Shown: in pieces, positions 1-35,150 of the stretch | Position numbering within the stretch: position 1 is the stretch's first letter | Layout of the letters: each line of letters opens with the position of its first letter | NCBI RefSeq assembly: GCF_006345805.1 | Contig: NW_021835886.1 | Location: 1 to 37,587 of the forward strand | Length of the DNA stretch: 37,587 nt | Direction: 5' to 3' | Source of the DNA: Octopus sinensis | Lineage: Eukaryota | Made by a program: the position numbers and the translations under genes | The notes under the pieces: model-generated | Databases searched by the model: none | What the model was told of the DNA's origin: nothing | Seen by the model: the letters and a program-made list of their open reading frames with translations, nothing else

Positions 1-190
1 TTGCCTCTTTCTTTCCTTTTTACGATCCCTTTTGATCGAAAACCAACCCCCTTTTTTTTTACCCCCAAAAGAAAAGCTCTACCTTGTAATTTTTTCTGTC
101 TGTGTGCAGCCCTGTGTGGCTAATAAAGAAACATATCTGTCTCTCTATCTGTTTATCTGCCAACCGAATGTCTATTTATAGATCTGTCTA
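1..190 (+). mobile_element. 3' UTR end of a Tx1/L1-clade LINE (copy 1, cut by window edge)
   Basis: GAAAAGCTCTACCTTGTAAT...GTGTGCAGCCCTGTGTGGCTAATAAAGAAACATATCT matches the 3' ends of the RT-bearing copies near 27270-27340 and 33265-33335; followed by degenerate (ATCT)n. Confidence 0.75.
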
Positions 191-272
191 TTTACCTGTC
201 CGTCCCCAGAGGCCAACAGCACAAGGTCCAGACCGGCAGATCCACCGACAACTTATTGTTACTTATTCATCG

Positions 273-908
273 GGAGGCGCAATGGCCCAGTGGTTAGGGC
301 AGCGGACTCGCGGTCATAGGATCGCGGTTTCGATTCCCAGACCGGGCGTTGTGAGTGTTTATTGAGCGAAAACACATAAAAAAGCTCCACGAGTCTCCGG
401 CAGGGGATGGTGGTGATCCCTGCTGTACTCTTTCACCACAACTTTCTCTCACTCTTACTTCCTGTTTCTGTTGTACCTGTATTTCAAAGGGCCGGCCTTG
501 TCCTCTCTGTGTCACGCTGAATATCCCCGAGAACTACGTTAAGGGTGCACGTGTCTGTGGAGTGCTCAGCCACTTCACGTTAATTCACCGGGCGTTGTGA
601 GTGTTTATGAGCGAAAACACCTAAAGCTCCACGCGGCTCCGGCAGGGGATGGTGGTGATCCCTGCTGTACTCTTTCAACACAACTTTCTCTCACTCTTAC
701 TTCCTGTTTCTGTGTACCTGTATTTCAAAGGGCCGGCCTTGTCACTCTCTGTGTCACGCTGATATCCCCGAGAACTACGTTAAGGGTACACGTGTCTGTG
801 GAGTGCTCAGCCACTTACACGTTAATTTCACACGAGCAGGCTGTTCCGTTGATTCGGATCAACCGGAACCCTCATCGTCGTAACCGACGGAGTGCTTCCA
901 TCCCATCC
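273..908 (+). mobile_element. tRNA-derived SINE (family A) with ~246-bp internal tandem duplication
   Basis: A box TGGCCCAGTGG and B box GGTTTCGATTCC; 12-bp TSD ACTTATTCATCG at 261-272 and 909-920; body repeated at 341-586 and 587-829. Confidence 0.85.
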
Positions 909-1011
909 ACTTATTCATCGATCCCTGCCGGACGAAAGACAAATGTCAAGGGGAGTAACTCAATATCATAATGCGTTCTACCCGACAGATTTTTCACCCT
1001 TTACACTTTAC

Positions 1012-1740
1012 ACTTTTACTTGCTTCAGTCACCTGACTGCGGCCATGCTGGAGCACCGCCTTCAGTCGAGCAATTGACCCCGGGACTTATTCTTTGTAAG
1101 CCCAGTACTTATCCTATCGGTCACTTTTTTGCCGAACCGCTAAGTGACGGGACGTAAACACATCAGCATCGGTTGTCAAGCAATGCTAGGGGACAAACAC
1201 AGACACACACATACATACATAATTATACGACAGGCTTCTTTCAGTTTCCGTCTACCAAATCCACTCACAAGGCATTGGCGGCCCGAGCTATAGCAGAAGA
1301 CACGACTTGCCCAAGATCCACACAGTGGGACTGAACCCGGAACCATGTGGTGGTTAGCAAGCTACTACCACACAGCCACTCCTGCACCTATACATATATA
1401 TATACGACAGGCTTCTTTCAGTTTCCGTCTACCAAATCCACTCACAAGGCATTGGTCGGCCCGAGGCTATAGCAGAAGACACTTGCCCAAGGGCCACGCA
1501 GTGGGACTGAACCCGGAACCATGTGGTTGGTAGCAAGCTACTTACCACAAGCCACTCCTGCACCTATACATATATACCGACAGGCTTCTTTCGTTTCCGT
1601 CTACCAACCACCACTCACAAGGCATTGGTCGGCCCGAGGCTATAGCAAAGACACTTGCCCAAGGTGCCACGCAGTGGGACCGAACCCGGAACCTTGTGGT
1701 TGGTTAGCAAGCTACTTACCACACAGCCACTCCCGCACCT
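1012..1740 (-). mobile_element. SINE family B with its 5' (tRNA-like) half triplicated
   Basis: Reverse complement of the full + copy at 16271-16670; head unit repeated at ~1227, 1404 and 1577. Confidence 0.85.
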
Positions 1741-1801
1741 TGTCAATAATGTTTTGTCTTAGTAAGCTTTTTTGTAATTATATTGAACAAGAAATTATTA
1801 C

Positions 1802-2008
1802 TGTTTAAAGGTTGTTTCGTGTTCGCTATAGTTCCTTCTGTTGTTGTATCCAAAGTGGAATTGTAGTGGTAACAACCATTTGCAGTGAATGACCATCCAA
1901 CGCATTTCGTTTTGGTACAGCAATTATGTTCACAGTCATTTAGGTTATCTTCTTGTATAAGTTCACGGAAAGCTGAAGTTACATTTTTAACGTATTGGCA
2001 GGGTCTCT
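1802..2008 (-). CDS. Coding exon 4 of secreted CTL-like/PAN protein: PAN/Apple-like domain
   Basis: Acceptor TTTTCTCGCATTCCAG, donor ACA|GTAATA, 207 nt, phase 1-1. Translates (E)RPCQYVKNVTSAFRELIQEDNLNDCEHNCCTKTKCVGWSFTANGCYHYNSTLDTTTEGTIANTKQPLN; the C-x3-C-x5-C-x9-C spacing is PAN-like. The frame could instead read through to the stop at 1743-1745. Confidence 0.75.
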
Positions 2009-2218
2009 CTGGAATGCGAGAAAATATAGAACAAGGCATATAAAAATATAAAATGTATAATATAAGCACGTGAACAAATATATATACACACACACAAACA
2101 CACACTAAAATATACGAATACACACACATATACACATATACATACCTACATACACACATATGTATATAATATATATATATATGTACACACCATATACGTA
2201 TCTACATACACACACATA

Positions 2219-2261
<43 letters not shown>

Positions 2262-2263
<2 letters not shown>

Positions 2264-2472
2264 CGGGAAACTTTATGAAAATAAACAAAAGACGAAGGCA
2301 GGTGGAATACAAACAAACAATTGTATTAGTATGGCGCTCAGGAATATAAATAATAAAACAAGTCTTTTACGTTTCGAGCCTACGCTCTCCAACAGAAAGA
2401 TACACAGAAAAGAAACACGGAGAGAAACAAGGAAGAAAAAAAATGCGTGCAGAAGCTAGCGAATCAACATGG

Positions 2473-2475
<3 letters not shown>
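2262..2475 (-). mobile_element. Penelope-like element terminal fragment (subfamily 1)
   Basis: Shares AAGTCTTTTACGTTTCGAGCCTACGC...ACAGAAAG with 18765-18930; (TA)n on both sides; hammerhead-like motif on the minus strand. Confidence 0.55.
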
Positions 2476-2538
<63 letters not shown>

Positions 2539-2625
2539 CTTTTAATAAAATGTTGTAGTGCGAAACAATTGTAACAAATTACCGGAGTCATTCTTGTTGC
2601 TATTTTTTGAGTATATATATATATG

Positions 2626-2671
<46 letters not shown>

Positions 2672-2773
2672 ATATACGTACATACATACGTACACACACA
2701 CACAACACACACACACAACACACACAAATATATATATATATATATACGTACATACATACACACATATATATAT

Positions 2774-3003
2774 ACTAATCATATCTGTCTGGCATGTGGA
2801 GGAGAGTGTAATTCGGCAAGAGGACTTAAACAGCATGCAAAGGTACATGAAGCCCAGTTGCAACTAAAGCCGGCTATTACCAGTAAAGGTTTTAGTTGCC
2901 AATTCTGCACAAGACACTGGGCTAAAAAGTCACATTCGACCACAGCACCAGTAACAGTTAAGCTTCGTGCAATGGCCATACTCGATAACGAGGGGGCAGC
3001 CAT
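2774..3003 (+). mobile_element. 3' fragment of RTE-like LINE with C-terminal zinc-finger motifs
   Basis: Closely similar to 18341-18592 apart from a short deletion; ends GGCCATACTCGATAACGAGGGGGCAGCCAT then (AT)n. Confidence 0.6.
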
Positions 3004-3370
3004 AATATATATATATATGTATATGTATATATATGTGTATACACACACGCGCACACATATATGCAGATATTTATTAATGTTTGATTTCATGTGGAGTTAT
3101 GTATAAAAACAATTGAATAATGAATATAAAAATTACTCAAATGTTTTTATGTGGGAATACATGAATTATTACAAAGAAAAAGTTGTCAGTCACATCGATG
3201 TTTTTGCTTACCCGCCGTCATCAGGTTGTCTGGTGCGAAATTTTGTAATATGTAATGTATATAGGCAGGGGTATAATGTTGACAATGCATCTTTTTCCAG
3301 AAGATAGGGGTGTTGGTGGGTACTTCCATGAAGTTACAGGTCCTTAGTTAAAATCCCAGGTATATATATG

Positions 3371-3408
<38 letters not shown>

Positions 3409-3874
3409 AAAAATAGGATAAAATATTCATAAGAAATTATCAAGTAGTTAGCGTGAAAAACCTGATAAGAGAAAAAATCTGTAAGTTTTTTCCACTTGAA
3501 TATATTTATTCATATTATATAGAGGGCATTGTTACACATAAATGCCGCACGCTAGGAGGGACTCTTAAAGTAAAAACTACCAAAATAAACATATCGTACC
3601 GAATGCAAGTCTCGAAGCAAGTCATTTAAAAACAGAATTTAGCTGCAGATCACCAGTGATTTCGTAATCAGCGCAGTGGTTGCGCTCTTTACTCATCGGT
3701 GCAAGCATGATTCAAGATTTATAATGAATGAACAAAATCAACATACCATATATATATATGTATGTAAGATCATTCACGTTTACAAATATATTTCCACGTA
3801 GGTACTTACACAAACTTGTATACATATATACATATATATGGATATATATATCCATATTTATTAGTTGATGGTAT

Positions 3875-4026
3875 ACTCTTTTACTCTTTTACATGTTTCA
3901 GTCATTTGACTGCGGCCATGCTGGAGCACCGCCTTAAGTCGAGCAAATCGACCCCGGGACTTATTCTTTTTGTAAGCCCAGTACTTATTCTATCGGTCTC
4001 TTTTGCCGAACCGCTAAGTGACGGGG
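3875..4026 (-). mobile_element. SINE family B, 3' half
   Basis: TGTTTCAGTCATTTGACTGCGGCCATGCTGGAGCACCGCC...GCCGAACCGCTAAG as in other family B copies. Confidence 0.85.
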
Positions 4027-4254
4027 TATAAGGAAATTAAGAAAACACTACGGATGTGTCTTAAGCGAAAGGATATTTGATGGTGCTCCGAAAGGAGTTA
4101 ATTCGGCACACAGTTTGCTGGATCTTCAGCTACCTGTCAGGTGAAAATAGGAAAGAGACAGTGGCAAAAATAGATCGAGGAAGGTGCCGAAGGTGGAATA
4201 CAAAATAAGAGTAGGTGCGATTATGAGAGCAATGATAATGGTGATGATAATAAT

Positions 4255-4443
4255 CCTTTCTGCTGGAGGAACAAGGCCTCAAATTTGATGGGGGGGGGGG
4301 ACTAGTAGATTACATCGACCCCAGTGTTTCACTGGCACTTAATTTATCGACCCCGAAAGGATGAAAGGCAAAGTCGACTTCGGAGGAATTTGAACTCAGA
4401 ACGTAGCGGTAGACGAAATACCGCTAAGCATTTCACCCGGCGT
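4255..4443 (-). mobile_element. SINE family C variant, partial
   Basis: Core TTTATCGACCCCGAAAGGATGAAAGGCAAAGTCGAC..GAATTTGAACTC shared with 11279-11509 and 13662-13892, with a different tail. Confidence 0.8.
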
Positions 4444-4465
4444 TCATAATCTTATTAGCATTAGA

Positions 4466-4655
4466 ATAACATGAACAGGATAAACTATCCATATTTTGCA
4501 GAAAAATCTGTCGGCGACTAGACTTCTCGTTGGGTCAGTTTAGCTTAATGGTAAAGCACTTGACGCGTAATCACGGGGATGTGAGTTCGAGTCTCATGGC
4601 TGGCCGCCGACAGATTTTTCTGTAAAATATGGATAGTTTATTCTGTTCATGTTAT
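4466..4655. mobile_element. MITE-like element with 51-bp terminal inverted repeats enclosing a tRNA-like sequence
   Basis: 4466-4516 and 4605-4655 are reverse complements at 49/51 positions; can be read as TA|ACATG...CATGT|TA (possible TA TSD). Confidence 0.85.
4534..4605 (+). tRNA. tRNA-Thr(CGT)-like cloverleaf, probably a pseudogene or element-borne Pol III unit
   Basis: Acceptor GTCAGTT/GGCTGGC (GU-rich, one mismatch); D arm GCTT-AATGGTA-AAGC; anticodon arm CTTGA-CGCGTAA-TCACG (CGT at 4566-4568, G instead of U33, one mismatch); T arm GTGAG-TTCGAGT-CTCAT; TTTTT at 4615-4619. Confidence 0.55.
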
Positions 4656-4719
4656 ATCATTGGCATAATCCTGCGTTTGAGAATAAAATTATTTCCTTAT
4701 CTGTATCTAATAATAGAAT

Positions 4720-5050
4720 GGTAATGACGTCGTCGTCGTCACCATAGTCGACGACAACAGCAACGATGATGATGGTGATGGTGATGATGATGATGATGAT
4801 AGTGATGATGGTGATGGTGATGATGATGATCGTGTTGAATAAGATAGTAGGCAGTGGCGTCGGTGGCGTCGGTGGTGATGATGTTGGGGATGATGATAAT
4901 GCTGGTGCTGGCGCTAGTAATGACGATGATGATGATGATAGTAGTGGTGATGATGATGATGATGATGATGATGGCAATGATGTTAATTACAAAATAATAG
5001 AAGATGGCAATACAATTGATGCTTAAGATGATAGTGATGATAGTGGTAAT
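4720..5050. repeat. Degenerate (GAT)n/(GGT)n trinucleotide tract
   Basis: Directly visible; explains the poly-D, poly-M and poly-S ORFs. Confidence 0.95.
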
Positions 5051-6384
5051 GATGTTAGGAGGTAGTGAAATGTTCTTTCGCCTGAAGTGAAAGACAAGAA
5101 ACTAATTGCTCTATGTCTCTTGTTACAGACGTAAGCAGTTGCCACAAACTCCTACTTCCGGTTGATACTTAGTCTTAATGTTAACCTGTAACACATTGCA
5201 TTTTATCTAGCATTGTCTCCCCTGCTACTGCCCTGTTATTACAGGGGAGAAAACTCATACGGTGACATGATGCACCTACAACGTGCTGAAGGTTAAATAT
5301 TAATATTTGCGAAAAATATATTTGCTCCCGTCTCTTAATGAATATTTTAGAGTATATACCGACACCTTCCTTGTTTCTTAGTGTGTTTGTAACTAAACTA
5401 CTGCCGTTCGATGTACTATGGTATATTTTAGCTTAAGTCTCTTTGTGTTCTGAGTTCAAATTCCTCTATGGCCAACCTGTGGTTAGACTTAACACTCCTT
5501 TCGGTTTCATACCTACACCTGGCACAATAGGTTCCTTCAGAGGAGTCCCCTCTGTTGTAGGTACTCTTACCAAGTCTCCGATTTGAGGATAATACTCCTC
5601 CTTCCCATTCCACCAGCATCTGTGGCCCTGTAAAGAGTCAGGGACACTGGCTCATCCACTTTCTGTTTAAAAGACAAAATCGAGAGTTAAAATACTATAT
5701 TCACCCTCATAAGTTTTGGCCCAACAATTTCAATAACTTCAATAAATATTTGATTCTGTTTTCGACAGAAAACATTTGATAGTTGAGTCACGGAAGCAAA
5801 TCCTAAGAGGATTTGGTGCCCAATATTTCCATAATAATTTAGCCCAAATCGAGAAATCTACTCCGTTTTCCATTTCAAACACTGAAGTGAATAATCAATT
5901 AAGTCATCCAATGTGATCTTCCTTAAAGGTAATGGAAACCGATTTTAGTGAGTTTTCGCTTTTATTCCCAGTAAAATCAAAGAAATATTGACGCTCGCTG
6001 GTTGGCTGTTTTCAGTTTTGTTAGATATTCCCAACACAACTTTCTGATAAGCGGGATCAATAAACAAGGTTGTAAATCACGTCCATAGTTCAATTCAGTC
6101 CATTGCAATTCTAAAATACGGTCTTGTAAGAAAGCGGAACTTTAATAATCGAAGACTGGTAAGCGGTTCAAGTGGTAGAAGGAATAAATATCTTGCGTTA
6201 TTTTGCGATTTTCCTTAAAGCTGTGAGGTCAAACGACAGAATTAAATCTGCGTCACATATGAATAAACCGAGAGTTTATATCTCTTACGCTAGAGTTCGT
6301 CACATTGATTTACTGAACGTAAAATAGATTAATTTGGGGGAATGAAACAATAAAATGAAAAACAAGATTAGATTGTAAACCTAC

Positions 6385-6506
6385 CTTTTTTACAAAACAC
6401 CAAACGCTTATCGCTGCATTGAACACATTCCATCGTGTGGTTGTTGTCCATCATGGCACATCCATTGTTCGGACAATCGCTATGAGCTATCCAGTAGGTC
6501 GTGACA
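6385..6506 (-). CDS. Coding exon 3: C-terminal half of C-type-lectin-like domain
   Basis: Acceptor AATGTTCGTTACAG, donor AAG|GTAGGT, 122 nt, phase 2-1. Translates (S)VTTYWIAHSDCPNNGCAMMDNNHTMECVQCSDKRLVFCKK. Not in the ORF track. Confidence 0.8.
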
Positions 6507-6689
6507 CTGTAACGAACATTTCACGAGAGTTTAATATATATATATATATTGGCCTGCTTGCTTAGCCAGCAGGGTGGCGTCATTCGAAGGCTAAAACAGT
6601 GCGAACGCATTGTGACCAGCGATGTGTAACAACATCTGATGGTCTGGTCGGTCACGTGATCACGTGATATATATATATGTAGTAATATA

Positions 6690-6830
6690 TCTGTGTGTGT
6701 ATCCGTATGTGTTCGTGTCTGTTTTTGTCCCATCACCACCACTTGAGAACCGGTGTCGATGGATTTACGTCCTCGTAACTGAGCGGTTCGGCCACAGACA
6801 CTGACATAATAAGGCCCAGGCTTAAGAAAA
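6690..6830 (+). mobile_element. Diverged SINE family B-related 3' part
   Basis: TTTGTCCCATCACCACCACTTGAGAACCGGTGTC...CGTAACTGAGCGGTTCGG resembles the family B body. Confidence 0.6.
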
Positions 6831-6883
6831 AAAAACATAAAAAGGACACCTTTGATGCATAGGGTCTTAGAAGAAGGAGTGAA

Positions 6884-7172
6884 GGAGAGCGTGGCTCAGT
6901 TGTTACGGTATTCGGCTCACAATCGTAAGGTCGAGAGTTCGATTCTCAGAGGCGCGTTGTGTCCTTGAGCAAGACACTTTATTTCACGTTGCTCCTGTCC
7001 ACTCAGCTGGCACAAAATGAGTAGTACCTGTAATTCGAAAGGGGACCAGCCTTTTCGGGGTCGATAAATTAAGTACCAGTTACGCACTGGGGTCGATGTA
7101 ATCGACTTAATCCGTTTGTCTGTCCTTGTTTGTCCCCTCTGTGTTTAGCCCCTTGTGGGTAATAAAGAAACA
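6884..7172 (+). mobile_element. Chimeric SINE: family A-type head joined to family C 3' half
   Basis: tRNA-like head GGAGAGCGTGGCTCAGTG...GAGTTCGATTC; A-type body to GGACCAGCCTT; then C-type TTCGGGGTCGATAAATTAAGTACC...AATAAAGAAAC. Confidence 0.75.
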
Positions 7173-7207
7173 GATATTAGATCTAGTGAAATGTCATAGA
7201 TACTTAC

Positions 7208-7394
7208 CTGTTGTTACGATTTTTTTGAAACCATTCACTAATATTTGGATGTAGGTCATCAGCCATGCTGACCATCGTGGCATCGTTCGATTCACACAAC
7301 GTTATGGCCATCCCATTGTTAACCTCCAAACTGTACGTTAGCAATGAAACCGCCTGGTTTCCACTAGCATTTGATAATACGAGGAGTATGGTTG
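7208..7394 (-). CDS. Coding exon 2: end of signal peptide and N-terminal half of C-type-lectin-like domain
   Basis: Acceptor TTGATATTTACAG, consensus donor CAG|GTAAGT, 187 nt, phase 1-2. Translates (A)TILLVLSNASGNQAVSLLTYSLEVNNGMAITLCESNDATMVSMADDLHPNISEWFQKNRNN, with the CTLD A-x3-C-x4-A-x-[ML]VS motif. Confidence 0.8.
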
Positions 7395-7504
7395 CTGTAA
7401 ATATCAATGGCGATGATTCAACAACAATCTGCGATTTTGATGATGAAAGTAATATCAGTGATGACGATGATTATGATATAATGATAATAATAATAATAAT
7501 AATG

Positions 7505-7560
<56 letters not shown>

Positions 7561-7563
<3 letters not shown>

Positions 7564-7756
7564 CCAGTACTTAGAAACACATATAACATACAGAAAATTG
7601 CACTACTAGGCACTGCACACATCCTACGCAGAACACTTTCCATACAATAACCATCAGAGCATCTCAACAAATCACAGCACATACCCAAGGCACACAGAGC
7701 TGCGCTCGGTAGTGAAGTGAAAGCACGCTATAAATATAAAAATAAAACTACTGAAC
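7561..7756 (+). mobile_element. R4/Dong-type (RLE) LINE, ORF C-terminus plus 3' UTR
   Basis: Encodes ...NIQKIALLGTAHILRRTLSIQ*, which I recognise as an R4-clade C-terminus; (AAT)n on both sides. Confidence 0.7.
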
Positions 7757-7764
7757 AATAATAA

Positions 7765-7802
<38 letters not shown>

Positions 7803-8086
7803 TAATAATATAATAATAATAATGATAATAATAATGATAATAATAATGATAATAATAATGATAATAATAATGATAATAATAATAATAATAAGAATAATAA
7901 TGATAATAATAATGATAATAATAATGATTAATATAATAATAATAATAATATATAATAATAATAATAATAACAATAATAATAATAATAATAGTAATAATAG
8001 TAATAATAATAATAATAATAATAAATAATAATAATTAATAAGAATAATAATAAGAATAATATAATAATAAGAATAGTAATAATAAT

Positions 8087-8121
<35 letters not shown>

Positions 8122-8570
8122 TAATAATAACAATAATAATAATAATAATAAATAATAATAATAATAATAACAATAAAATAATAATAAGAATAATAATAAT
8201 AAAATAATAATAATTAATAATAATAATATAATAATAATAGTAGTATAAGTAATAATAATATAATAATCATAATAATAATATCACTTCGGTAATATAATAA
8301 AATAATAATTTCTTAATCATTATAATATAAAAATAGTAATAAATACTTACATCATAATAATAAATAATAATAAATAATAATCATCTGTAATAATAATAAT
8401 AAAATAAGAATAGTAATAATAATAATAATCTAATAATAATAATATCTTGGCTGATATTTTTTGTTATGATGTCTGGTGTTTTGTCACCTTTGATGGCGAA
8501 CTGCTCTCTCACTCAATAATAATAATAATTAATGATCATAATAATGATAATAATAATAATAATAAGAATA

Positions 8571-8984
8571 AGGGATGAAAAATGATGTAGAGCCAAAATG
8601 TCGATATGCAACGATGAGATTGAAACAGTGGACCACCTAATCTCTGGGTGTAAGGTTTTAGCACCTGTAGAGTACAAATCAAATCATGACAGAGTTGGTC
8701 AATACCTATACTGGATAATGTGTCGGCATTATAAAATCAAAACTGCTGACAGATGGTAGAAGAACCACCCTGAGGCTGTAACTAAGGGAGAAAATGTAAC
8801 TATTCTTCGGGACTTCCCAGTATGTACAGACCGGACCATCAAAGCAAATAAACAAGATATTGTTGTGAAAGACCAAAACAATAAAGTCTGTTTATTGATT
8901 GACATGAGGAGCATACCCTGTGACCATAGTAACTCTGGCGAAAGAATTTGATAAGCTCAGAAAATATAAAGATTTGCTAATCGA
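8571..8984 (+). mobile_element. R4/Dong-type LINE fragment: CCHC knuckle and restriction-like endonuclease, degenerate
   Basis: With one frameshift and a stop: KCR/CNDEIETVDHLISGC...HDRVGQYLYW...ILRDFPVCTDRTIKANKQDIVVKDQNNKVCLLIDM. Confidence 0.8.
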
Positions 8985-9187
8985 CCAGAAGAAAATTCCA
9001 ACTGGGCCCGCCACCTGCAAGGTCATGTGCTGTTTATCTTGATATGAGATCACCGTGTCGCGCACACATGGTTGTGATGAATGTGCGTAGTGTACCCTCA
9101 TCAGATGGGTAGTCATGATGGGTATACTGGGCTTCGTATATTTTACCTCAGTGTCACTTTGATGGCATGCCCTGCGCTCTCTCACTC

Positions 9188-9253
<66 letters not shown>

Positions 9254-9452
9254 CAAACATAATTTTCGTATGTTTTTTTTTAGGAATTCACTAGTACAAC
9301 GCTAAGTACAAAACCAAATATATGGCACCCTAGGCATAACACCAACATGAACTTCCAACCTGTTGTCTCGGTGAGACTTGGAGCCAGCTTGTGCAAATGT
9401 AACGCAAAAGTCAAACATATAATAATAAAATATAATATACTAATAATAATAA

Positions 9453-9486
<34 letters not shown>

Positions 9487-9494
9487 TAATAATG

Positions 9495-9770
9495 ATAGGG
9501 ATGTCAGAAACACCTAGACAATATCCCTGGAAAACCATGTCTCAAGGAAATCCAAAAGATTGTGCTAACAAGTACTGCCCACATCCTTAGAAAAACCCTA
9601 TCAATGTAAATGTTTGTGTTTGCATTACATGGAGATATATCTCTACTTCCCCGCCCCAAGCTTTCAGCTGTATTTCAACAACTCTTAACCTTCACTTGCC
9701 CTAGGGCGCTGGGTGTGCCCCGGCAGGTGATTGCATCAAACATGCAGATTAAAAGTAAATGACAATGATA
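9495..9770 (+). mobile_element. Second R4/Dong-type 3' end
   Basis: CQKHLDNIPGKPCLKEIQKIVLTSTAHILRKTLSM* then a distinct 3' UTR ending in (AAT)n. Confidence 0.7.
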
Positions 9771-9784
9771 ATAATAATAATATA

Positions 9785-9815
<31 letters not shown>

Positions 9816-9909
9816 TAATATAATATAATATATAATATAATAATAATAATATAATAATAATAATAATAATAATAATACTAAAATAATATAATAATAATAA
9901 TAATTCTTT

Positions 9910-9957
<48 letters not shown>

Positions 9958-9989
9958 GATGAAAAAGAAATGAAATCACTCTGTGCATG

Positions 9990-10815
9990 AGAAAGCTGAT
10001 GATGTAAATAACGAAGGTAATTTAGCTGGACAAATGACAATAAATGTCGAAGAAGAACAATGAAGAGGAGAATATTCAAGAAATGCTGCGAGGTATAATG
10101 TTTGGTGTGAACAATGAAATGCAACCAAATGTAATGGACAGAGAAAAAGTAAGGAGAGTCACAGGCAAAATGGTGTTTTGAGTTTGGTCAAAATAAAGAA
10201 AATTAGCGAAATAAACCAGCTAATGATGGCTGCCGCAAATGTTGAAGCTGACATAGAAGAATACAAGCGGAAGACTGTTCAAGAAAAGAAAGGACAGGAA
10301 AAGAAAGAATCCAACTGGAGGCAGAGAGTACAAAGGAAGTTGGAAAAGACACGAGAAGAACTGAGGAAATGAAATGGGACAATGAGAGGAGAGCTCAAGA
10401 ATGAGGTAGTAATCAGAAAATTGAATGGACAGTACAGGTTAGAAGAAACGGTAAAACAAACAGTATATGAAGTGTTAGAAAGGGTGATGACGTTAAAGGT
10501 CAAATTGAAAAGATATGATGCAATATGCAAAGGTTTTGAACAGAATAGATTGTTTTAATCAAATAGAAGGCGTGTTTTTGAGGAAATAAAGGAGGAATAA
10601 CATCAGGAAGTAATTCTTGATGCGGAAGAAAGTAAAGTATTCTGGGTAGAACTTTGCAACCGGCCAGTGAGACATGAAAAAGTGCAGAGTGGCTAACACA
10701 GGTGTAGAGACAAAATGGACGTCAGAATTGATATGCATTTAGTGAAACTGAAATTTAAAAATTACCAAATTGAAAAGGACTCGGATGAAGTACAAGATTA
10801 TTGGCTGAAAAACTT
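9990..10815 (+). mobile_element. Degenerate pre-RT region of an R4/Dong-type LINE
   Basis: Broken frames such as LVKIKKISEINQLMMAAAN, NWRQRVQRKLEKTREEL, GFEQNRLF*SNRRRVFEEI and LDAEESKVFWVEL resemble the R4-clade region upstream of RT. Confidence 0.6.
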
Positions 10816-11278
10816 TATACAGCGGTGGTGCCCCAGCATGGCCGCGGCCTTCGGGCCAAAACATTTTTCAGGATTTAAGGATTTAAGTTGCATGAAAGGA
10901 CCGCTGCACAACTTTATGAATGTTGTTACGTCACAAAGACCACTTGAAATGTAAATTGGTGCCAAATTTTCGACTTATAACCTCTTCATCGCTTATGTTG
11001 AACAGAAAAGATGCAGGTATCAAAGTAGGGTAACTAAAGGCTTGTTATAAGTCTTTACAGGCTGGTGATCTTAGAATGACTAACATTCGCTTAGTAATTG
11101 ACAAACAGTTGGCAATGGAATGCAAACTTTGGTAACTATTAGACCAAGCTCTTTGAAACCGCGAGCAGGGCACGCTGTAGTGGGCGCCATTTTGTTTGGT
11201 TATACCTCTGGAGACACAAAATGGGCGGTCAAATGGTTTTTGTGTTTATGTCAACCGTAAACACAAAACCACGTAACC

Positions 11279-11509
11279 TATTTCTTTACTACTCACAAGG
11301 GGCTAAACACAGATAGGACAAACAAGGACAGACAAAGGGATTAAGTCGATTATATCGACCCCAGTGCGTAACTGGTACTTATTTAATCGACCCCGAAAGG
11401 ATGAAAGGCAAAGTCGACCTCGGCGGAATTTGAACTCACAACGTAACAGCAGACGAAATACGGCTACGCATTTCGCCCGGCGTGCTAACGTTTCTGCCAG
11501 CTCGCCGCC
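11279..11509 (-). mobile_element. Full-length SINE family C
   Basis: Head GGCGGCGAGCTGGCAGAAACG...GAGTTCAAATTCC on the minus strand; AACCACGTAACC duplicated at 11267-11278 and 11515-11526. Confidence 0.9.
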
Positions 11510-11799
11510 CCCGTAACCACGTAACCGCCCCCGCTTTGTGACTTTCAGGGGTCTAGTCAAACAAGATCACTCCCGTTAGAGCGACCTTGTAGGGTTCAAA
11601 TTGTTAAACATCTACTTTCTCGCACAATAGCATGTTCCACAATCACAGCGTACGACAGACGCATTCCTAACATGGCGCAAAGCTAATATTAAACCATTTA
11701 AACAGGTGAATAATTTATCAAAGTTCTGTAGTGTCAAATTATACCAAGAGGAAGAAATAAGATGTAAATTTGAAACACCGTCGACATAGTTTGACTTAC

Positions 11800-11851
11800 C
11801 AGATAGAACACGGAACGTGTAAGCAAGACATTTTCCTGAAGTAACGACCAT
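11800..11851 (-). CDS. Coding exon 1 (start codon) of secreted CTL-like/PAN protein
   Basis: ATG at 11851-11849 in Kozak-like GCAGGATGG; MVVTSGKCLAYTFRVLS; donor CTG|GTAAGT in phase 1. Splicing to exon 2 yields the signal-peptide-like MVVTSGKCLAYTFRVLSATILLVLSNASG. Confidence 0.65.
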
Positions 11852-16172: not shown

Positions 16173-16270
16173 ATTCACCATCTTGGAGATGAATAAATAT
16201 TGAAACAGTGAAGCGTAAATGATTTTCTGAGAATAGAAAAATATAATTATATGAAAAGGTCTGTAGCATA

Positions 16271-16670
16271 GGCGCAGGAGTGGCTGTGTGGTAAGTAGCT
16301 TGCTTACTAACTACATGGTTCCGGGTTCAGTCCCACTGCATGGCACTTGGGCAAGTGTCTTCTACTATAGTCTCGGGCTGACCAAAGCCTTGTGAGTGGA
16401 TTTGGTAGACGGAAACTGAAAGAAGCCTGTCGTATATATGTATATATATATATGTATGTGTTTGTTTGTCTGTGTTTGTTCCCCAACATCGCTTGACAAC
16501 CGATGCTGGTGTGTTTATGTCCCCGTAACTTAGCGGTTCTGCAAAGGAGACCGATAGAATAAGTACTAGGCTTACAAAGAATAAGTCCTGGGCTCGATTT
16601 GCTCGACTAAAATGCGGTACTCCAGCATGATCGCACTCAAATGACTGAAACAAGTAAAAGAGTAAAAGAG
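16271..16670 (+). mobile_element. Full-length SINE family B
   Basis: Head GGCGCAGGAGTGGCTGTGTGGTAAG...GGGTTCAGTCCC, internal (TA)/(TG) microsatellite, tail GACTGAAACAAGTAAAAGAGTAAAAGAG. Confidence 0.9.
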
Positions 16671-16804
16671 TATGGTAAAAAACATAACAAAATCCTTACC
16701 TCCGTGAATAACTGTAGTTCTCTCCTTTTCATCACAAGCTATGCATCCGCAATTTGTTGCTGCTGTTGTTGTTATTGTTGCCACTTACTATTATTATTAT
16801 TTTA

Positions 16805-20298: not shown

Positions 20299-20334
<36 letters not shown>

Positions 20335-20339
20335 TGTGT

Positions 20340-20548
20340 ATATGTTTGTGTGTCTGTGTTTGTCTCCCCCCCCCAACATCGCTTGGCAAGTGATGGTGGT
20401 GTTTTTACGTCTCTGTAAATCATCGGTTCGGAAAAAGAGACCGATAGAATAAGCACTAGGCTTACAAAGAATAAGTCCTGGTGTCGATTTGCTCGACTTA
20501 AGGCAGTGCTCCAGCATGACCGCAGTCAAATGGCCGAAACAAGTAAAA
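20340..20548 (+). mobile_element. SINE family B, 3' half
   Basis: GTGTTTGTCTCCCC...ACTTAAGGCAGTGCTCCAGCATGACCGCAGTCAAATGGCCGAAACAAGTAAAA. Confidence 0.85.
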
Positions 20549-20571
20549 TAATAAGAGGATATGTGACCTCG

Positions 20572-22733: not shown

Positions 22734-23234
22734 TGGTTGGTTGGCATCCTTTCTTGTCTCGGGAGACAATGGAGTTGCGCATAAAGTAGTCTAGTCCGGC
22801 TTTTATATTTCATGTCCTGATACATTTCCTGCTGTGGCTGTGTAGTCCTATCCTGGACAAACACTCCCTCTGGCAGGTACCGCAAATGTAGCGAAGACTG
22901 TTCCTGGCTGGTTGTAATGCCATAGTCTCTTGTTGACGTCTCTTCTTTCTTTCCATTTCTCCTCTCTCTCTCTGTCACTCCTTTGTACTCCCTCTTTTAC
23001 GGTACGTCGCCAGTCTCCACGGTTACCGGTAACTGCCTCCCAACCGCTAATATTGATGTTGCAGGCCTTCATGTCCCTTTTGCAAACATCCTTGTAACGT
23101 AAGATCGGTTTACTCACAGACCTAGTACCCCTAGCAAGCTCTCCGTAGAGTATGTCCTTTGGGATTCTGCCATCTTTCATACGGCTAACATGCCCAAGCC
23201 ATCTCATACGTCTTTGTGTGAGGAGTGCAAACAA
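22734..23234 (-). mobile_element. RTE-clade LINE, 3' segment
   Basis: LFALLTQRRMRWLGHVSRMKDGRIPKDILYGEL...RYKDVCKRDMK; 3' end CCATTGTCTCCCGAGACAAGAAAGGATGCC(AACC)n; lies in (TA)n. Confidence 0.9.
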
Positions 23235-23699
23235 AGGAGATGTTATTTGCTGATGATGCCGCTCTGGTAACACACACAGAAGAAGCCCTCCAAAGGCTCA
23301 TTAACTGTTTTGAGCAAGCATGTAACGACTTTGGCTTAGCTATCAGCCTTAAGAAGACCAACATCATGGGCCAGGCTACATCGGACATCCCAAACATACA
23401 TATTGGAGACCACAGATTTCAAGAGGTGGAGAAGTTTACCTATCTGGGCTCTACCGTCACCTACAATCTATCCCTTGACGCTGAGCTCAATATACGCATC
23501 GGCAAGGCAGCTGCTGCGATGGCCCAACTCTCCAAACGGGCTTGGGACAACAATAAGCTGACCAAGACCACGAAAATGAAGATCTACCACGCATGTGTAC
23601 TCAGCACTCTACTGTATGGAAGTGAAACCTGGACGCTATACACACGCCAAGAGCGTCGCCTAAACATCTTTCACCTGCGCTGCCTCCGAAAAATCCTAT
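23235..23699 (+). mobile_element. RTE-clade LINE RT segment, inverted relative to its 3' segment
   Basis: KEMLFADDAALV...EKFTYLGS...LLYGSETWT...HLRCLRKIL. Confidence 0.9.
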
Positions 23700-24045
23700 A
23701 TAAGTACAGGCGTGGTTGTTTTGATAGAAGTGGCACCTTGGGCAAGTGTCTTCCACTATAGCCTTGGGCCGACCAAAGCCTTGTGAGTGGATTTGGTAGA
23801 CGAAAATTGAAAGAAGCCCGTTATATATATCTACAAATATCTATGTGAGTTTTTCTGTTTGTTCCCCTCCACCGCTTGACAGCCGGTGTTGGTTTATTTT
23901 CTTCCCCGTAACTTAGTGGTTCGGGGAAAGGTACGATAAAATAAGTATCAGGCTTAAAAACAGTTCTGGGGTCGATTTGTTCGACTACAGTCTCAAGGCG
24001 GTGCTCCAGTATGGCCGCAGTCTAATGACTGGAGGAAGTAAAAGA
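23700..24045 (+). mobile_element. Diverged SINE family B copy
   Basis: GGCACCTTGGGCAAGTGTCTTCCACTATAGCC...GCGGTGCTCCAGTATGGCCGCAGTC. Confidence 0.8.
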
Positions 24046-24707: not shown

Positions 24708-24992
24708 CACCCCCATATATAATATATATATATATCGACGTGCCTCAACAGGTGCACAGTGTGCCACGCGTCAGATGTCAAAGTGGTCTCAGAACAACGT
24801 GAGATGAAATATTTTACTTAAGAACTGAACGCACCACCCGGTCTAGGAATTGAAACCATGATCTAGCGATCGTGAGTGAAACTCCGTAACCACTAAGTGA
24901 TGCGCCCTTTATGTTGATTTACTAAAAATGGTAGCTGATCGAACCAACAGGACATCGATGAGATTGGATGGTAGTCTTTCAGCTTATACTCT

Positions 24993-25225
24993 CTTACTCT
25001 TTTAATTGTTTCAGTCATTTGACTGTGGCCATGCTGGAGCACCGTCTTTAGTCGAGCAAATCGACTCCAGGACTTATTCTTTGTAAGCCTAGTACTTATT
25101 CTATCAGTCTATTTTCTTGAACTGCTAAGTTACGGGGTCGTAAACACACCAGCATCGGTTGTCAAGCGATGTTGGGGGACAAACACAGACACACAAACAC
25201 ATACACACATACATACATACATACA

Positions 25226-25259
<34 letters not shown>

Positions 25260-25440
25260 CATACATACATATACACACAATGGGCTTCTTTCAGTTTCAT
25301 CTACCAAATCCACTCACAAGGCTTTGGTCGGCCGGAGGCTATAGTAGAAGACACTTGCCCAAGGTGCCACACTGTGGGACTGAACCCGGAACCATGTGGT
25401 TTGTAAGCAAGCTACTTACCACACAGCCACTCTTACGCCT
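24993..25440 (-). mobile_element. Full-length SINE family B
   Basis: Reverse complement of the family B consensus with an internal (ATAC)n. Confidence 0.9.
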
Positions 25441-26312
25441 ATTATGTTCATTTTAAATATAAAGTTTCTATATTGGTTAAAGAAGATGAACAACAACCAC
25501 GGTAGCTAATGTTCTAAATCAGTTCGAAGGACTTGTTTACCATATCTGATTTATTTTCTACGACCGAAAAGTTCAGGATACGAAAATAATTCGTAATTTA
25601 TTGATCTTTAGTTCATGGAACTTGTGCAGCAGATAATCTATAACTCAATTAATTCTTCATCTACAGGTATTCGGTTGTTTTTGGAAATTAGTTATGATAC
25701 GGTGAAGCCTTAATGACGAGATCATAGATTTTCAAAACACACACAAACGCACACAAACGCACTCACACACAAATACACACACACACACACGCTCACAAAC
25801 ACATGTACGCAAAGACAAACCACAGAGAAACACACAGACAAAAGACACACATAAACTCGCGTACACTGACAAACACACACAGAGACAAATACACACACAA
25901 ATACACACCCCACATACAAATATACATACATACACACAAACACACACATATACACAGACACACAGACACATGCTCATACACACACACACACACACACGCA
26001 ACTTTATTACACAACAATCTTTCTAGAGTATGCTCCAACGGTTTGTACAAACGGCTCTGGTTTGTACTTCAGGGCCTTCCACGATCATTGGTGACCACGC
26101 TTCCGCACATGCGTATACAGGCCTGAACACATTTGTTTTTCTGAAAGATTAGCCGCTGACGATAGTCTCTTCTCTCTCTCTATGCTAACGATGATTCTTC
26201 AAGAGAAAAGACACTCACTTGCGTGCGAGATATATGTCGGCACCAGTTTCACCACAGGCGGTTTTTCTCAGAAGGCGAAAAACTGGAATAAATACTGCAA
26301 GGAATCTCCCAC

Positions 26313-27340
26313 GACGTCAAGGAAGGGTGAATGGCACCGCGAGTATCGCGTTGCTCTCAAGCAAGTATACCGTCCCAGGCCGACCTTGAGCGACTTCAAC
26401 ACAACTAAAGCGTTCTATAGGGGATTAGTGGAGGGGAGGTACGACGACGAGCTCGGGGCGAACCTGGGCGTCGACGAGGAATACCTGACCCGCCTGTTCA
26501 AGACGACTTTCGGGCCGGGACCTATGGACAACCTCCAGTGCTCCCTGGCCTGGAAGTGCTATCGAGAAATGCTACCCGTTCGGGATATGCTCTACAGGCA
26601 TGACTCGAGAAATACGGGGCCGACCTCTCCGAGATGCGGCCAGAGCGACGAAACCGTTCTGCACGCACTCGTACAGCATCCAACCATTTCCGACCTGTGG
26701 GCCTATGTAGAACGACTGCTATCGCTTGTGGGACGAGTCAGTTTATCAACCGAGTCTATCGTGAATATTGTTGCGCCTCCTTACTTGAAACGGGAAGGAA
26801 GAGGCATTTCCATCGTACTTGTGGCTATGGCGAAAGAATGTGCATGGTGGACACGTCTGAAAAGTCTAGAGACAAACACTTACCTCTCTGGTGAATCTCT
26901 CATCAACTTCTTCAAGTATCACTTGAAGAGGAGGGTGAGAGTAGAGGGAAGTTTTGCTTAGTGAATGTTTAAAAAAAAAAAGATGGGTGAATGTAGCAAG
27001 GGTGGTACGTGTGATTGATGCATAATCCTATGAACCCCCCAAAAAGAAAGGAAAAAATAGAGTCGCTCTAATGCGTTTTCTTGCATGACATTATTGCCCG
27101 AGGTTACCGTGGTCTTTTCTGTAGGCTTTTCTTTCGACGGATAAACCTAATCTGTTCCCCCTTTTTACACTATGACATTTCTGTCATACACGATCCCTAA
27201 TGATCGGCCTTTTTTTAACGATCCCTTTTCGAATTTCTACCCTCCTTTCCTTTTTCTTTTCCTTCTCTTCCCAAAAAGAAAAGCTCTACTTGGTATTTTG
27301 TCCCCTCTTTGTTCAACCCTGTGTGGCCAATAAAGAAACG
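26313..27340 (+). mobile_element. 5'-truncated Tx1/L1-clade LINE (copy 2)
   Basis: RKGEWHREYRVALKQ...ETVLHALVQ..., closely similar to 32215-33330; AATAAAGAAAC then (ATCT)n to ~27486. Confidence 0.9.
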
Positions 27341-34670: not shown

Positions 34671-34781
34671 TACTTCCCCAGTATGGAATTCAATATTTCA
34701 CAATATAGGTAAAGAAATTTGAGAGATTTGAAAAGAAAATACGAACCGGCTATTTTTCCAAAACAATGTTACTATACTGTA

Positions 34782-35150
34782 GGCACAGGAGTGGCTGAGT
34801 GGTAAGTAGCTTGCTTACCAGCCACATAGCACCTTAGGCAAGTGTCTTCTACTATAGCCTAGGGCCGACAGAAGCCTTTTGAATGGATTTGGTCGACGGA
34901 AACTGAAAGAAGCCTGTCGTATATATGTATATATATGTTTGTGTGTGTAGATGTTTGTTTCTGTGTTTGTCCCCCAACATCATTTGACAACCGTTGGTGG
35001 TGTGTGTATCTTAGCGGTTCGGGAAAAGAGACCGATAAAATAAGTACTAGGCTTACAAAGAATAAATTCTGGGGTCGATTTGCTCGACTAAAGGCGGTGC
35101 TCCAGTATGGCCACAGTCAAAATGACTGAAACAAGGAAAGAGTAAAAGAG
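34782..35150 (+). mobile_element. SINE family B copy with internal deletions
   Basis: GGCACAGGAGTGGCTGAGTGGTAAG...AATGACTGAAACAAGGAAAGAG. Confidence 0.85.

What the first reader, a model, noticed from the sequence alone, without database searches (positions are those of the whole stretch)
1802..11851. Hidden four-exon gene for a secreted compact-CTL plus PAN/Apple protein
Seen: four minus-strand exons with GT/AG sites whose phases chain exactly (1,2,1,1), giving 189 codons without a stop: MVVTSGKCLAYTFRVLSATILLVLSNASG|NQAV...LCESNDATMVSM...YWIAHSDCPNNGCAMMDNNHTMECVQCSDKRLVFCKK-ERPCQY...DCEHNCCTKTKCVGWSFTANGCYHY.... It has several N-glycosylation sequons (NIS, NNS, NHT, NVT, NST). Established: CTLD and PAN modules mediate extracellular recognition in invertebrate immunity, adhesion and secretions. 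Inference: a lineage-specific secreted or surface recognition protein, probably continuing beyond the left edge. I recognise no named orthologue.
Basis: partly seen in the sequence, partly recalled or inferred. Interest (0 to 1): 0.7.

Follow-up and report, generated by a model that had tools for sequence, protein, structure and literature searches.

The report
Octopus surface glycoprotein gene, already annotated
The four exons are real and form the front part of an octopus-only membrane glycoprotein gene that public databases already list as uncharacterised, with a probable PAN/Apple module and a possible stripped-down C-type-lectin-like module, so it is a correct but fairly ordinary find.

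Summary
The four minus-strand exons exist exactly as described: GT/AG sites, chained phases and 189 open codons. The gene is not hidden. With 19 read-through codons it is identical to RefSeq XP_029657314.2, uncharacterized LOC115231434 of Octopus sinensis. Orthologues lie at the syntenic site next to SNRNP200/BRR2 in O. vulgaris and O. bimaculoides, with all splice sites, all 12 mature cysteines and only in-frame indels kept. There the gene runs on from the donor at 1802 into two more exons. These encode a Ser/Thr-rich stalk, a conserved juxtamembrane motif, one transmembrane helix and a 16-residue tail. They would lie 4.7-8.6 kb beyond the window's left edge and are absent from this assembly. 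The product is therefore most likely a type I membrane glycoprotein, not a 208-residue secreted one. PAN is supported below threshold but repeatedly. The C-type-lectin reading rests on one near-threshold Pfam hit (E 4.7e-4, 21.3 vs 22.6 bits), absent in the O. bimaculoides orthologue, plus canonical cysteine spacing. The sugar-binding loop is missing. Both AlphaFold runs failed, so no fold was tested. The outer domains evolve fast (dN/dS 0.79) and the anchor slowly (0.13-0.35). No relative of the N-terminal half was found outside Octopus.

The parts
11800..11851 (-). Exon 1: ATG plus most of the signal peptide (MVVTSGKCLAYTFRVLS), 52 nt, ending in phase 1.
   Evidence: It is 100% identical in O. 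vulgaris. ATG and donor are conserved in O. bimaculoides. The hydrophobic peak at residues 7-27 is followed by the A-S-G cleavage motif.
7208..7394 (-). Exon 2: end of the signal peptide plus the first half of the CTL-like module (strand, helix with Cys51, ATMVSM, helix ISEWFQKN), 187 nt.
   Evidence: O. vulgaris differs at 3 of 187 nt with splice sites kept. In O. bimaculoides the exon is 196 nt, an in-frame +9. It is included in the RefSeq models of O. sinensis and O. bimaculoides but skipped in the two O. vulgaris models.
6385..6506 (-). Exon 3: second half of the CTL-like module (YWIAHSD, then C96-x13-C110-x7-C118, ending in FCKK), 122 nt.
   Evidence: O. vulgaris differs at 1 of 122 nt. 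The O. bimaculoides exon is 119 nt. The Lectin_C hit reaches the end of this exon.
1802..2008 (-). Exon 4: PAN/Apple-like module (C124, then C146-x3-C150-C151-x4-C156-x9-C166, with GWSF), 207 nt, followed by the donor GTAATA.
   Evidence: It is identical in O. vulgaris. Pfam gives PAN_4 E 1e-4, PAN_3 0.007, PAN_2 0.023. It is single-copy in the assembly.
1743..1801 (-). Intron-4 read-through (SNNFLFNIITKKLTKTKHY plus TAA) that RefSeq uses as the C-terminus. It is probably not the normal coding end.
   Evidence: A 1-bp indel just after the donor shifts this frame in both O. vulgaris and O. bimaculoides. Both orthologues splice here to exon 5.

Best explanation
The window carries exons 1-4 of the Octopus sinensis gene LOC115231434. 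This is a six-exon gene whose last two exons fall off the end of this unplaced 37.6-kb contig and are missing from the assembly. Read through its orthologues, the full product is about 474 residues. It has a cleaved signal peptide, a roughly 90-residue Cys-rich module with the cysteine framework of a C-type lectin-like domain but without the long loop that binds Ca2+ and sugar, and a PAN/Apple-like module. These are followed by a roughly 200-residue Ser/Thr-rich, N- and probably O-glycosylated stalk, a CxCxC motif, a highly conserved juxtamembrane motif (KKNLSATIRRKTSAQDDRPSAQ), one transmembrane helix and a 16-residue tail. Shown: gene structure, conservation, topology signals, and fast evolution of the outer domains against a slowly evolving anchor. 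Inferred: it sits on the cell surface and holds two small recognition modules away from the membrane on a mucin-like stalk. There it would bind a protein or glycan ligand without classical Ca2+-dependent lectin chemistry. With no signalling domain, it would act in adhesion, as a co-receptor, or as a shed ligand-binding ectodomain.
For: The spliced peptide is identical to XP_029657314.2, whose only contig is 37,587 bp long, the window's length. The window is collinear with O. vulgaris chromosome OX597835.1, window 4-21028 matching L006 24381-1. Exons 5 and 6 there (L006 29072-29146 and 32196-32977) lie beyond the window edge. The six-exon O. vulgaris chain including exon 2 is open for 474 codons. 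The O. bimaculoides orthologue LOC106873133 has the same exons and the same downstream neighbour, SNRNP200/BRR2. There are exactly two hydrophobic segments, at residues 7-27 and 436-461, and the stalk is 39% Ser+Thr. Four of five mature sequons are conserved in position. Pfam hits: Lectin_C E 4.7e-4, and PAN_4, PAN_3 and PAN_2. Between O. sinensis and O. bimaculoides, exons 1-4 give dN 0.177, dS 0.225, ratio 0.79. The anchor gives 0.35, and 0.13 against a third octopod. The terminal exon is absent from the assembly by protein and DNA search, with a positive control that worked.
Against: No transcript data could be consulted, so exon 2 inclusion and the exon 4 to 5 junction in O. sinensis rest on orthologue models and conservation. 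Both O. vulgaris models skip exon 2 and start at an out-of-frame internal ATG. The membrane anchor is not observed in O. sinensis itself. Neither domain passes a Pfam gathering threshold. The O. bimaculoides N-terminal module gives no Lectin_C hit. AlphaFold2 gave pLDDT 33.6 and 34.5. PDB sequence and profile searches gave nothing. The function is inference only.
Confidence: 0.75

Rival explanations
1. The RefSeq form is the true product: a short, 208-residue secreted protein made by reading into intron 4 and terminating at 1743-1745, with no stalk and no membrane anchor.
For: This is the model NCBI annotated. The read-through is open for 19 codons. The roughly 60 nt after the donor are highly conserved at the DNA level among three species.
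Against: O. sinensis differs from both O. vulgaris and O. bimaculoides by 1 bp just after the donor, so the tail is out of frame in those two species. Both orthologues splice from this donor to exon 5. The contig ends 1.8 kb further on, so an annotator could not have found exons 5-6. I saw no AATAAA near the stop.
Confidence: 0.12
2. The N-terminal Cys-rich module is not a C-type lectin-like domain but an unrelated, lineage-specific disulfide-rich fold. Only the PAN module has known relatives.
For: There is no Lectin_C hit for the whole protein or for the O. bimaculoides module. hhalign probability against a small CTLD alignment is 6.6%. A search of 1.8 billion representative proteins found no relative. 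PDB profile search found none. There is no confident model.
Against: The isolated O. sinensis module hits Lectin_C at E 4.7e-4, 1.3 bits under the cut-off, as the top family. By my inspection against the mannose-binding protein pattern recalled from memory, the cysteine spacing equals the canonical CTLD: C1 in a helix about 32 residues before YWIAH, then C2-x13-C3-x7-C4 and FCKK. hhalign independently aligns A..C...L..[LM]...W[FI]..N...YW[IV] to gastropod CTLDs (P 0.0056).
Confidence: 0.35
3. The exon-2-skipped transcript annotated in O. vulgaris is the main form. It would give a protein without a signal peptide, starting MSCLHVPCSIC from an internal ATG.
For: Both O. vulgaris models, CAI9738833.1 and CAI9738834.1, have this structure.
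Against: Exon 2 and its splice sites are intact in O. vulgaris, with 3 of 187 nt changed and 2 of those synonymous. Exon 2 is used in both RefSeq models. Its indels against O. bimaculoides are in frame and Cys51 is kept. A Cys-rich, sequon-rich, stalk-plus-TM protein without a signal peptide makes little biological sense.
Confidence: 0.08
4. The locus is a decaying or non-functional gene that stays open by chance.
For: dN/dS is 0.79 for exons 1-4. There are no paralogues and no relatives outside Octopus.
Against: Between O. sinensis and O. bimaculoides the frame is open despite 16% nucleotide divergence (P about 0.05). Three of three indels are in frame. All 15 Cys/Trp are conserved (P 0.0019). 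All eight splice sites are kept. Between O. sinensis and O. vulgaris the exons differ at 0.7% against 2.1% for non-coding DNA.
Confidence: 0.04

Closest known systems
XP_029657314.2, uncharacterized protein LOC115231434 (Octopus sinensis, RefSeq)
   Different: RefSeq adds 19 read-through codons from intron 4. Orthologues indicate these are not the normal C-terminus.
CAI9738834.1 (O. vulgaris, 405 aa), CAI9738833.1 ('Apple domain-containing protein' in UniProt), and LOC106873133 (O. bimaculoides, 413 aa)
   Same: They are syntenic orthologues next to SNRNP200/BRR2. They share exons 3-4 (O. vulgaris) or exons 1-4 (O. bimaculoides). They show the continuation into the stalk and TM exons.
   Different: The O. 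vulgaris models skip exon 2. The O. bimaculoides model leaves the last exon inside a Ser-Gly repeat and misses the TM module, which is nevertheless intact in its genome at L045 38490-38834.
PAN/Apple domains (Pfam clan: PAN_1 to PAN_4, MANSC/KIAA0319_N), as in plasminogen and HGF N-domains, plasma prekallikrein and factor XI, nematode cuticle proteins and apicomplexan adhesins
   Same: It has the core C-x3-C...C-x9-C framework with an aromatic GWSF strand. It hits four clan members, with the same region of each profile aligned.
   Different: All scores are below the gathering thresholds (best 22.7 against 27). It is a single copy with an extra Cys pair (C124 and C151). No fold was verified.
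C-type lectin-like domains lacking the long loop region (compact CTLDs such as Link modules and bacterial intimin/invasin CTLDs; from my own knowledge)
   Same: It has a four-cysteine CTLD framework, a WIGL-like YWIAH strand and a C-terminal FxCxK. Only about 5 residues occupy the place where canonical CTLDs have a loop of about 30 residues.
   Different: There is no detectable sequence relation to Link or intimin families. EPN/QPD and WND motifs are absent, so classical Ca2+-dependent sugar binding is not expected. The Pfam match is sub-threshold and seen in one species only.
Gastropod CTLD-stalk-TM proteins (Littorina saxatilis P0007, Batillaria attramentaria P0008) and octopus mucin-like paralogues (L007-L014)
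   Same: They share the terminal module: helix, K.NLS.TIR.KTSA.D.RPSAQ, then a TM helix. The gastropod proteins carry bona fide Lectin_C domains upstream.
   Different: Similarity is confined to the anchor. Their ectodomains are canonical-length CTLDs or Thr-rich repeats, not the compact module plus PAN.

Membership tests
C-type lectin-like domain (Pfam PF00059 Lectin_C) | Profile match at or above the curated gathering score (22.6 bits) | tested here: not met
   The isolated O. sinensis module scores 21.3 bits, E 4.7e-4. No hit is reported for the whole protein or for the O. bimaculoides module.
C-type lectin-like domain (Pfam PF00059 Lectin_C) | Four framework cysteines (C1 in helix 1 paired with C4 in the last strand; C2 paired with C3) at canonical spacing, plus a WIGL-type strand | tested here: met
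   By inspection of the sequence: C51, YWIAH at 84-88, C96-x13-C110-x7-C118 and FCKK. All are conserved in O. bimaculoides. The disulfide pairing itself is inferred.
C-type lectin-like domain (Pfam PF00059 Lectin_C) | Long loop region with the Ca2+/carbohydrate site (EPN or QPD, and WND). This defines lectin-active CTLDs, not the fold. | tested here: not met
   Only CPNNG lies between the YWIAHSD strand and C96, and there is no EPN, QPD or WND motif. This is compatible with a compact, non-lectin CTLD only.
C-type lectin-like domain (Pfam PF00059 Lectin_C) | CTLD fold (two helices and two antiparallel sheets) | tested here: inconclusive
   AlphaFold2 gave mean pLDDT 33.6 with a single sequence and 34.5 with a 3-sequence alignment. 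No fold search was run because the models are unusable. PDB profile search was empty.
PAN/Apple domain (Pfam PAN clan; PROSITE Apple profile) | Profile match at or above the curated threshold | tested here: inconclusive
   Pfam gives PAN_4 22.7 bits (cut-off 27), PAN_3 16.6 (21.1), PAN_2 15.2 (21.1) and KIAA0319_N 15.4 (27). For O. bimaculoides, PAN_4 is 18.7 and PAN_3 is 16.0. UniProt's name for the O. vulgaris orthologue, 'Apple domain-containing protein', implies an automatic profile match that I could not rerun.
PAN/Apple domain (Pfam PAN clan; PROSITE Apple profile) | Core cysteine framework around a central helix and hairpin (C...C-x3-C...C...C) | tested here: met
   C146-x3-C150, C156-x9-C166 and GWSF are invariant in three species. 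The outermost Apple disulfide (first to last Cys) is not evident.
PAN/Apple domain (Pfam PAN clan; PROSITE Apple profile) | PAN fold | tested here: inconclusive
   The AlphaFold2 models have low confidence. PDB sequence and profile searches were empty.
Mucin-like type I membrane glycoprotein | Signal peptide, Ser/Thr-rich stalk, single C-terminal TM helix, short tail | tested here: met
   This was tested on the O. vulgaris six-exon chain. Hydropathy peaks occur only at 7-27 and 436-461, and residues 190-395 are 39% Ser+Thr. In the window itself only the signal peptide is present. The stalk and TM exons are missing from the assembly.

The most novel reading that the evidence does not exclude
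This would be an Octopus-restricted surface receptor whose ligand-binding head combines a minimal CTLD with no long loop and a PAN module. The head would be under diversifying selection while its anchor is frozen, as expected for a molecule in an arms race such as pathogen, gamete or self/non-self recognition. Separately, the anchor exon (CxCxC, helix, K.NLS.TIR.KTSA.D.RPSAQ, TM) would be an unnamed, anciently conserved molluscan module shuffled onto many different ectodomains.
Probability: 0.2. Interest if true: 0.45.

Novelty: new member of a known kind. Interest (0 to 1): 0.27.

Why it matters
The practical value is for annotation. The RefSeq model for LOC115231434 is truncated by a contig end. 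The O. vulgaris models skip a conserved coding exon. The O. bimaculoides model misses its own transmembrane module. Combining the three gives one coherent six-exon type I membrane glycoprotein. Biologically, it adds one genus-restricted, fast-evolving candidate recognition molecule to the cephalopod surface repertoire. It also points to a conserved molluscan anchor module with no Pfam family. None of this changes current understanding unless function or positive selection is demonstrated.

Tried and rejected
- **Structure prediction.** AlphaFold2 ran on XP_029657314.2 alone and with a 3-sequence Octopus alignment. Both gave pLDDT about 34, so I ran no fold search.
- **Sequence searches.**
  - phmmer against 1.8 billion representatives gave only the query itself plus a repeat artefact, P0004.
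  - A word-indexed search restricted to residues 28-192 found only O. bimaculoides.
  - PDB searches with single sequences and two-sequence profiles gave no meaningful hit.
- **hhalign.** Against a hand-made CTLD alignment it gave probability 6.6% and P 0.0056, which is suggestive only.
- **Paralogue search in the genome.** None was found for exons 1-4. Exon 4 is single-copy.
- **Family scans of the genome.** Six-frame scans of the assembly with Lectin_C and PAN_4 did not list this locus.
- **Positive selection from exon versus intron divergence.**
  - Exons differ at 15.9% and collinear aligned introns at 8.25% (P 1.8e-8).
  - However, dS in both the head and the conserved anchor is about 0.23. 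Aligned introns therefore underestimate the neutral rate, and I do not claim dN greater than neutral.
  - Fixed-length global flank alignments were confounded by insertions.
  - BRR2 third-position sites were too few to use.
- **Logan contigs L046 and L047.** These proved to be genomic, not transcripts.
- **Literature.** Searches for the LOC and XP identifiers, and for octopus + C-type lectin + apple domain, returned nothing.

Full report
**Where the window comes from.** The window is the whole of contig C12357 (37,587 bp) of a 2.72-Gb, 13,516-contig assembly. The proteins it encodes identify the assembly as Octopus sinensis.

**Checking the observation.** Reading the minus strand confirms each exon and each splice signal.
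- Exon 1 is 11851-11800, followed by GTAAGT.
- Exon 2 is 7394-7208, preceded by TTTACAG and followed by GTAAGT.
- Exon 3 is 6506-6385, preceded by GTTACAG and followed by GTAGGT.
- Exon 4 is 2008-1802, preceded by ATTCCAG and followed by GTAATA.

The lengths 52, 187, 122 and 207 nt chain in phase. Reading on past 1802 gives 19 more codons and a TAA at 1745-1743.

**The gene is not hidden.** The 208-residue read-through product is letter for letter RefSeq XP_029657314.2, 'uncharacterized protein LOC115231434 [Octopus sinensis]'. Its only contig on record is 37,587 bp long.

The O. vulgaris orthologues are CAI9738833.1 (201 aa, which UniProt calls 'Apple domain-containing protein') and CAI9738834.1 (405 aa). 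The O. bimaculoides orthologue is LOC106873133 (413 aa), which is 67% identical over residues 28-192. No paper in the searchable library mentions these identifiers.

**Full gene structure.** Window 4-21028 is collinear, in reverse orientation, with O. vulgaris chromosome OX597835.1 (L006 24381-1).

In O. vulgaris, exons 1-4 differ from the window at only 4 of 568 nt. One change is non-synonymous (S25L in the signal peptide). All splice sites are identical.

From the donor equivalent to 1802 the orthologue splices to a 75-nt exon (L006 29072-29146) and a 782-nt terminal exon (32196-32977). These would lie about 4.7 kb and 7.8-8.6 kb beyond the window's left edge.

Joining all six O. vulgaris exons, exon 2 included, gives an open 474-codon frame.

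The O. bimaculoides locus has the same four exons, of 52, 196, 119 and 207 nt, with conserved GT/AG. In both species the next gene downstream is SNRNP200/BRR2.

The terminal exon is absent from the O. sinensis assembly by protein search (best hits 32-39% paralogues) and by DNA search. A positive control with exon 4 found exactly one copy. The RefSeq C-terminus is therefore best explained by the contig ending. Its 19-codon tail is also put out of frame in both other species by a 1-bp difference just after the donor.

**The annotation discrepancies.**
- The two O. vulgaris models start at an internal, out-of-frame ATG of exon 1 (MSCLHVPCSIC) and skip exon 2. Because exon 2 is 187 nt long, this restores the frame of exon 3.
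- Exon 2 is nevertheless intact in O. vulgaris. Both RefSeq models use it, and its differences from O. bimaculoides are in-frame.
- I therefore regard exon 2 inclusion as the productive form. Only transcript data can settle this.
- The O. bimaculoides RefSeq model leaves the last exon inside a Ser-Gly repeat. Yet the TM module is intact in that genome, 85% identical at L045 38490-38834.

**Is it a selected coding sequence?** Between O. sinensis and O. bimaculoides the exons differ at 15.9% of nucleotides. Several features still point to constraint.
- The frame stays open. Simulation gives a 5% chance of that after 90 random substitutions.
- All three indels are multiples of three.
- All 12 cysteines and 3 tryptophans of the mature part are kept while 33% of residues differ (P = 0.0019).
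- Four of five mature N-glycosylation sequons keep their position.
- Between O. sinensis and O. vulgaris the exons are more conserved than non-coding DNA (0.7% against 2.1%, P = 0.014).

**Rates of evolution.**

| Region | Comparison | dN | dS | dN/dS |
|---|---|---|---|---|
| Exons 1-4 overall | O. sinensis vs O. bimaculoides | 0.177 | 0.225 | 0.79 |
| CTL-like part | same | 0.185 | 0.218 | 0.85 |
| PAN part | same | 0.205 | 0.252 | 0.81 |
| Stalk | O. vulgaris vs O. bimaculoides | 0.067 | 0.100 | 0.67 |
| Terminal module | O. vulgaris vs O. bimaculoides | 0.079 | 0.227 | 0.35 |
| Terminal module | O. vulgaris vs a third octopod (Logan contig L046) | 0.065 | 0.501 | 0.13 |

So the head evolves two to three times faster at the protein level than the anchor.

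The exons are also about twice as diverged as the collinear aligned introns (15.9% against 8.25%, P = 1.8e-8). For exon 4 the figures are 38 of 207 against 8 of 265 in its flanks. However, dS is about 0.23 in the conserved anchor too. The aligned introns therefore understate the neutral rate. I claim fast evolution with a fixed cysteine scaffold, not proven positive selection.

**Domains: the PAN module.**
- The whole protein gives only PAN_4 at E 0.011.
- Scanned alone, exon 4 hits four PAN-clan models: PAN_4 (E 1e-4, 22.7 bits against a cut-off of 27), PAN_3, PAN_2 and KIAA0319_N.
- PAN_4 and PAN_3 recur for O. bimaculoides.
- The C-x3-C...C-x9-C core with GWSF is invariant.

**Domains: the N-terminal CTL-like module.**
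- The isolated O. sinensis module hits Lectin_C as its best family, at E 4.7e-4 and 21.3 bits against a cut-off of 22.6.
- The O. bimaculoides module gives no such hit.
- By inspection, the module has the CTLD framework: Cys51 in an A..LC helix, ATMVSM, a helix ISEWF, a WIGL-like YWIAH, then C96-x13-C110-x7-C118 and FCKK.
- Only five residues stand where canonical CTLDs have the long loop with the EPN/QPD and WND sugar-binding motifs. The comparison with canonical spacing rests on my own knowledge of mannose-binding-protein-type CTLDs.
- hhalign against a small alignment of gastropod and octopus CTLDs produced the same register for the first half, but with P 0.0056 and probability 6.6%.

**Fold tests.** Both AlphaFold2 jobs failed, with pLDDT 33.6 and 34.5. 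PDB sequence and profile searches returned nothing relevant. A scan of 1.8 billion representatives found no true relative.

**Verdict on domains.** PAN is likely. A compact, non-lectin CTLD is plausible, at roughly 60%. Neither is demonstrated.

**Topology and likely mechanism.** The full-length chain has exactly two hydrophobic segments.
- The first (residues 7-27) ends in A-S-G before Asn30. This fits a cleaved signal peptide.
- The second (436-461) is a TM helix followed by 16 residues.

Residues 190-395 are 39% Ser+Thr. The most likely reading is a type I, heavily glycosylated surface protein. It would display two small disulfide-rich recognition modules on a mucin-like stalk. With the sugar-binding loop absent, Ca2+-dependent lectin activity is not expected. 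With no cytoplasmic domain, it would work through adhesion, co-receptor action or shedding. These functional steps are inference.

**The anchor module.** The last exon carries CxCxC, a helix, then K.NLS.TIR.KTSA.D.RPSAQ and the TM helix.
- It recurs in at least eight other octopus loci. One of them follows a Thr-rich repeat within an open frame of 1,158 codons.
- It also occurs in the gastropods Littorina and Batillaria, downstream of genuine Lectin_C domains.
- It has no Pfam family.

**The rest of the window.** It holds decayed non-LTR retrotransposon fragments, repeated SINE-like elements and long microsatellites. I saw no second gene.

**Verdict.** It is a correct reconstruction of an already annotated, uncharacterised, Octopus-restricted gene. 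The useful additions are a corrected six-exon, membrane-anchored model and evidence for a fast-evolving head on a conserved anchor. Interest is low to moderate.

Noticed in passing
Beyond window position 1; O. vulgaris L006 29072-29146 and 32196-32977; paralogues L007-L014; gastropod proteins P0007 and P0008: The terminal exon module (CxCxC, acidic helix, K.NLS.TIR.KTSA.D.RPSAQ, TM helix, short tail) is shared by at least eight other octopus loci and by Littorina and Batillaria proteins. It has no Pfam family. It looks like an old molluscan anchor exon attached to different ectodomains.
   Followed up: partly
G000 contig C9, about 20.35-22.03 Mb, and C17, about 21.67-22.26 Mb: A six-frame scan with PAN_4 lists roughly a hundred separate PAN-like exons packed into 1.7 Mb of C9, with a smaller cluster on C17. 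This is a very large tandem PAN-domain array with no close sequence similarity to the window's PAN exon.
   Followed up: no
Window 1-1801 and the contig's left end: The contig stops inside intron 4. The 3' exons of LOC115231434 are missing from the whole O. sinensis assembly, although they are present next to SNRNP200/BRR2 in O. vulgaris and O. bimaculoides.
   Followed up: yes
L045 37767-38834 against 50796-50936 (O. bimaculoides): The RefSeq model LOC106873133 splices out of a Ser-Gly repeat to a distant exon and ends in an unrelated basic tail. An intact TM module, 85% identical to that of O. vulgaris, lies unused in the same exon.
   Followed up: partly
Window 22848-23761, 26095-26961, 30658-32882: Decayed non-LTR retrotransposon fragments: an RVT_1 hit at 23222-23761 and a weak zf-RVT hit at 26095-26961. 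The stretches 26.1-27.0 kb and 32.1-32.9 kb encode near-duplicate peptides (EWHRE.RVALKQ...YRGLVEGRYDDELGANL).
   Followed up: partly
Window about 1000-1400, 16268-16686, 20300-20560, 24972-25440, 34780-35158: Copies of one short interspersed repeat of about 400 bp, also scattered many times through the O. vulgaris locus. One copy begins just after the RefSeq stop codon at 1743.
   Followed up: no
Window about 7400-8300 (intron 1) and 4739-5101: Long ATT/ATC-type microsatellite tracts give the lowest G+C content in the window (0.26) and produce spurious Ile/Tyr/Leu-rich open frames.
   Followed up: no
Exons 1-4 against L045: On the sense strand, A<->G differences outnumber C<->T by 33 to 16 in the exons. 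In the aligned introns the counts are 128 to 179. This could reflect base composition, chance, or a link to cephalopod A-to-I editing.
   Followed up: no
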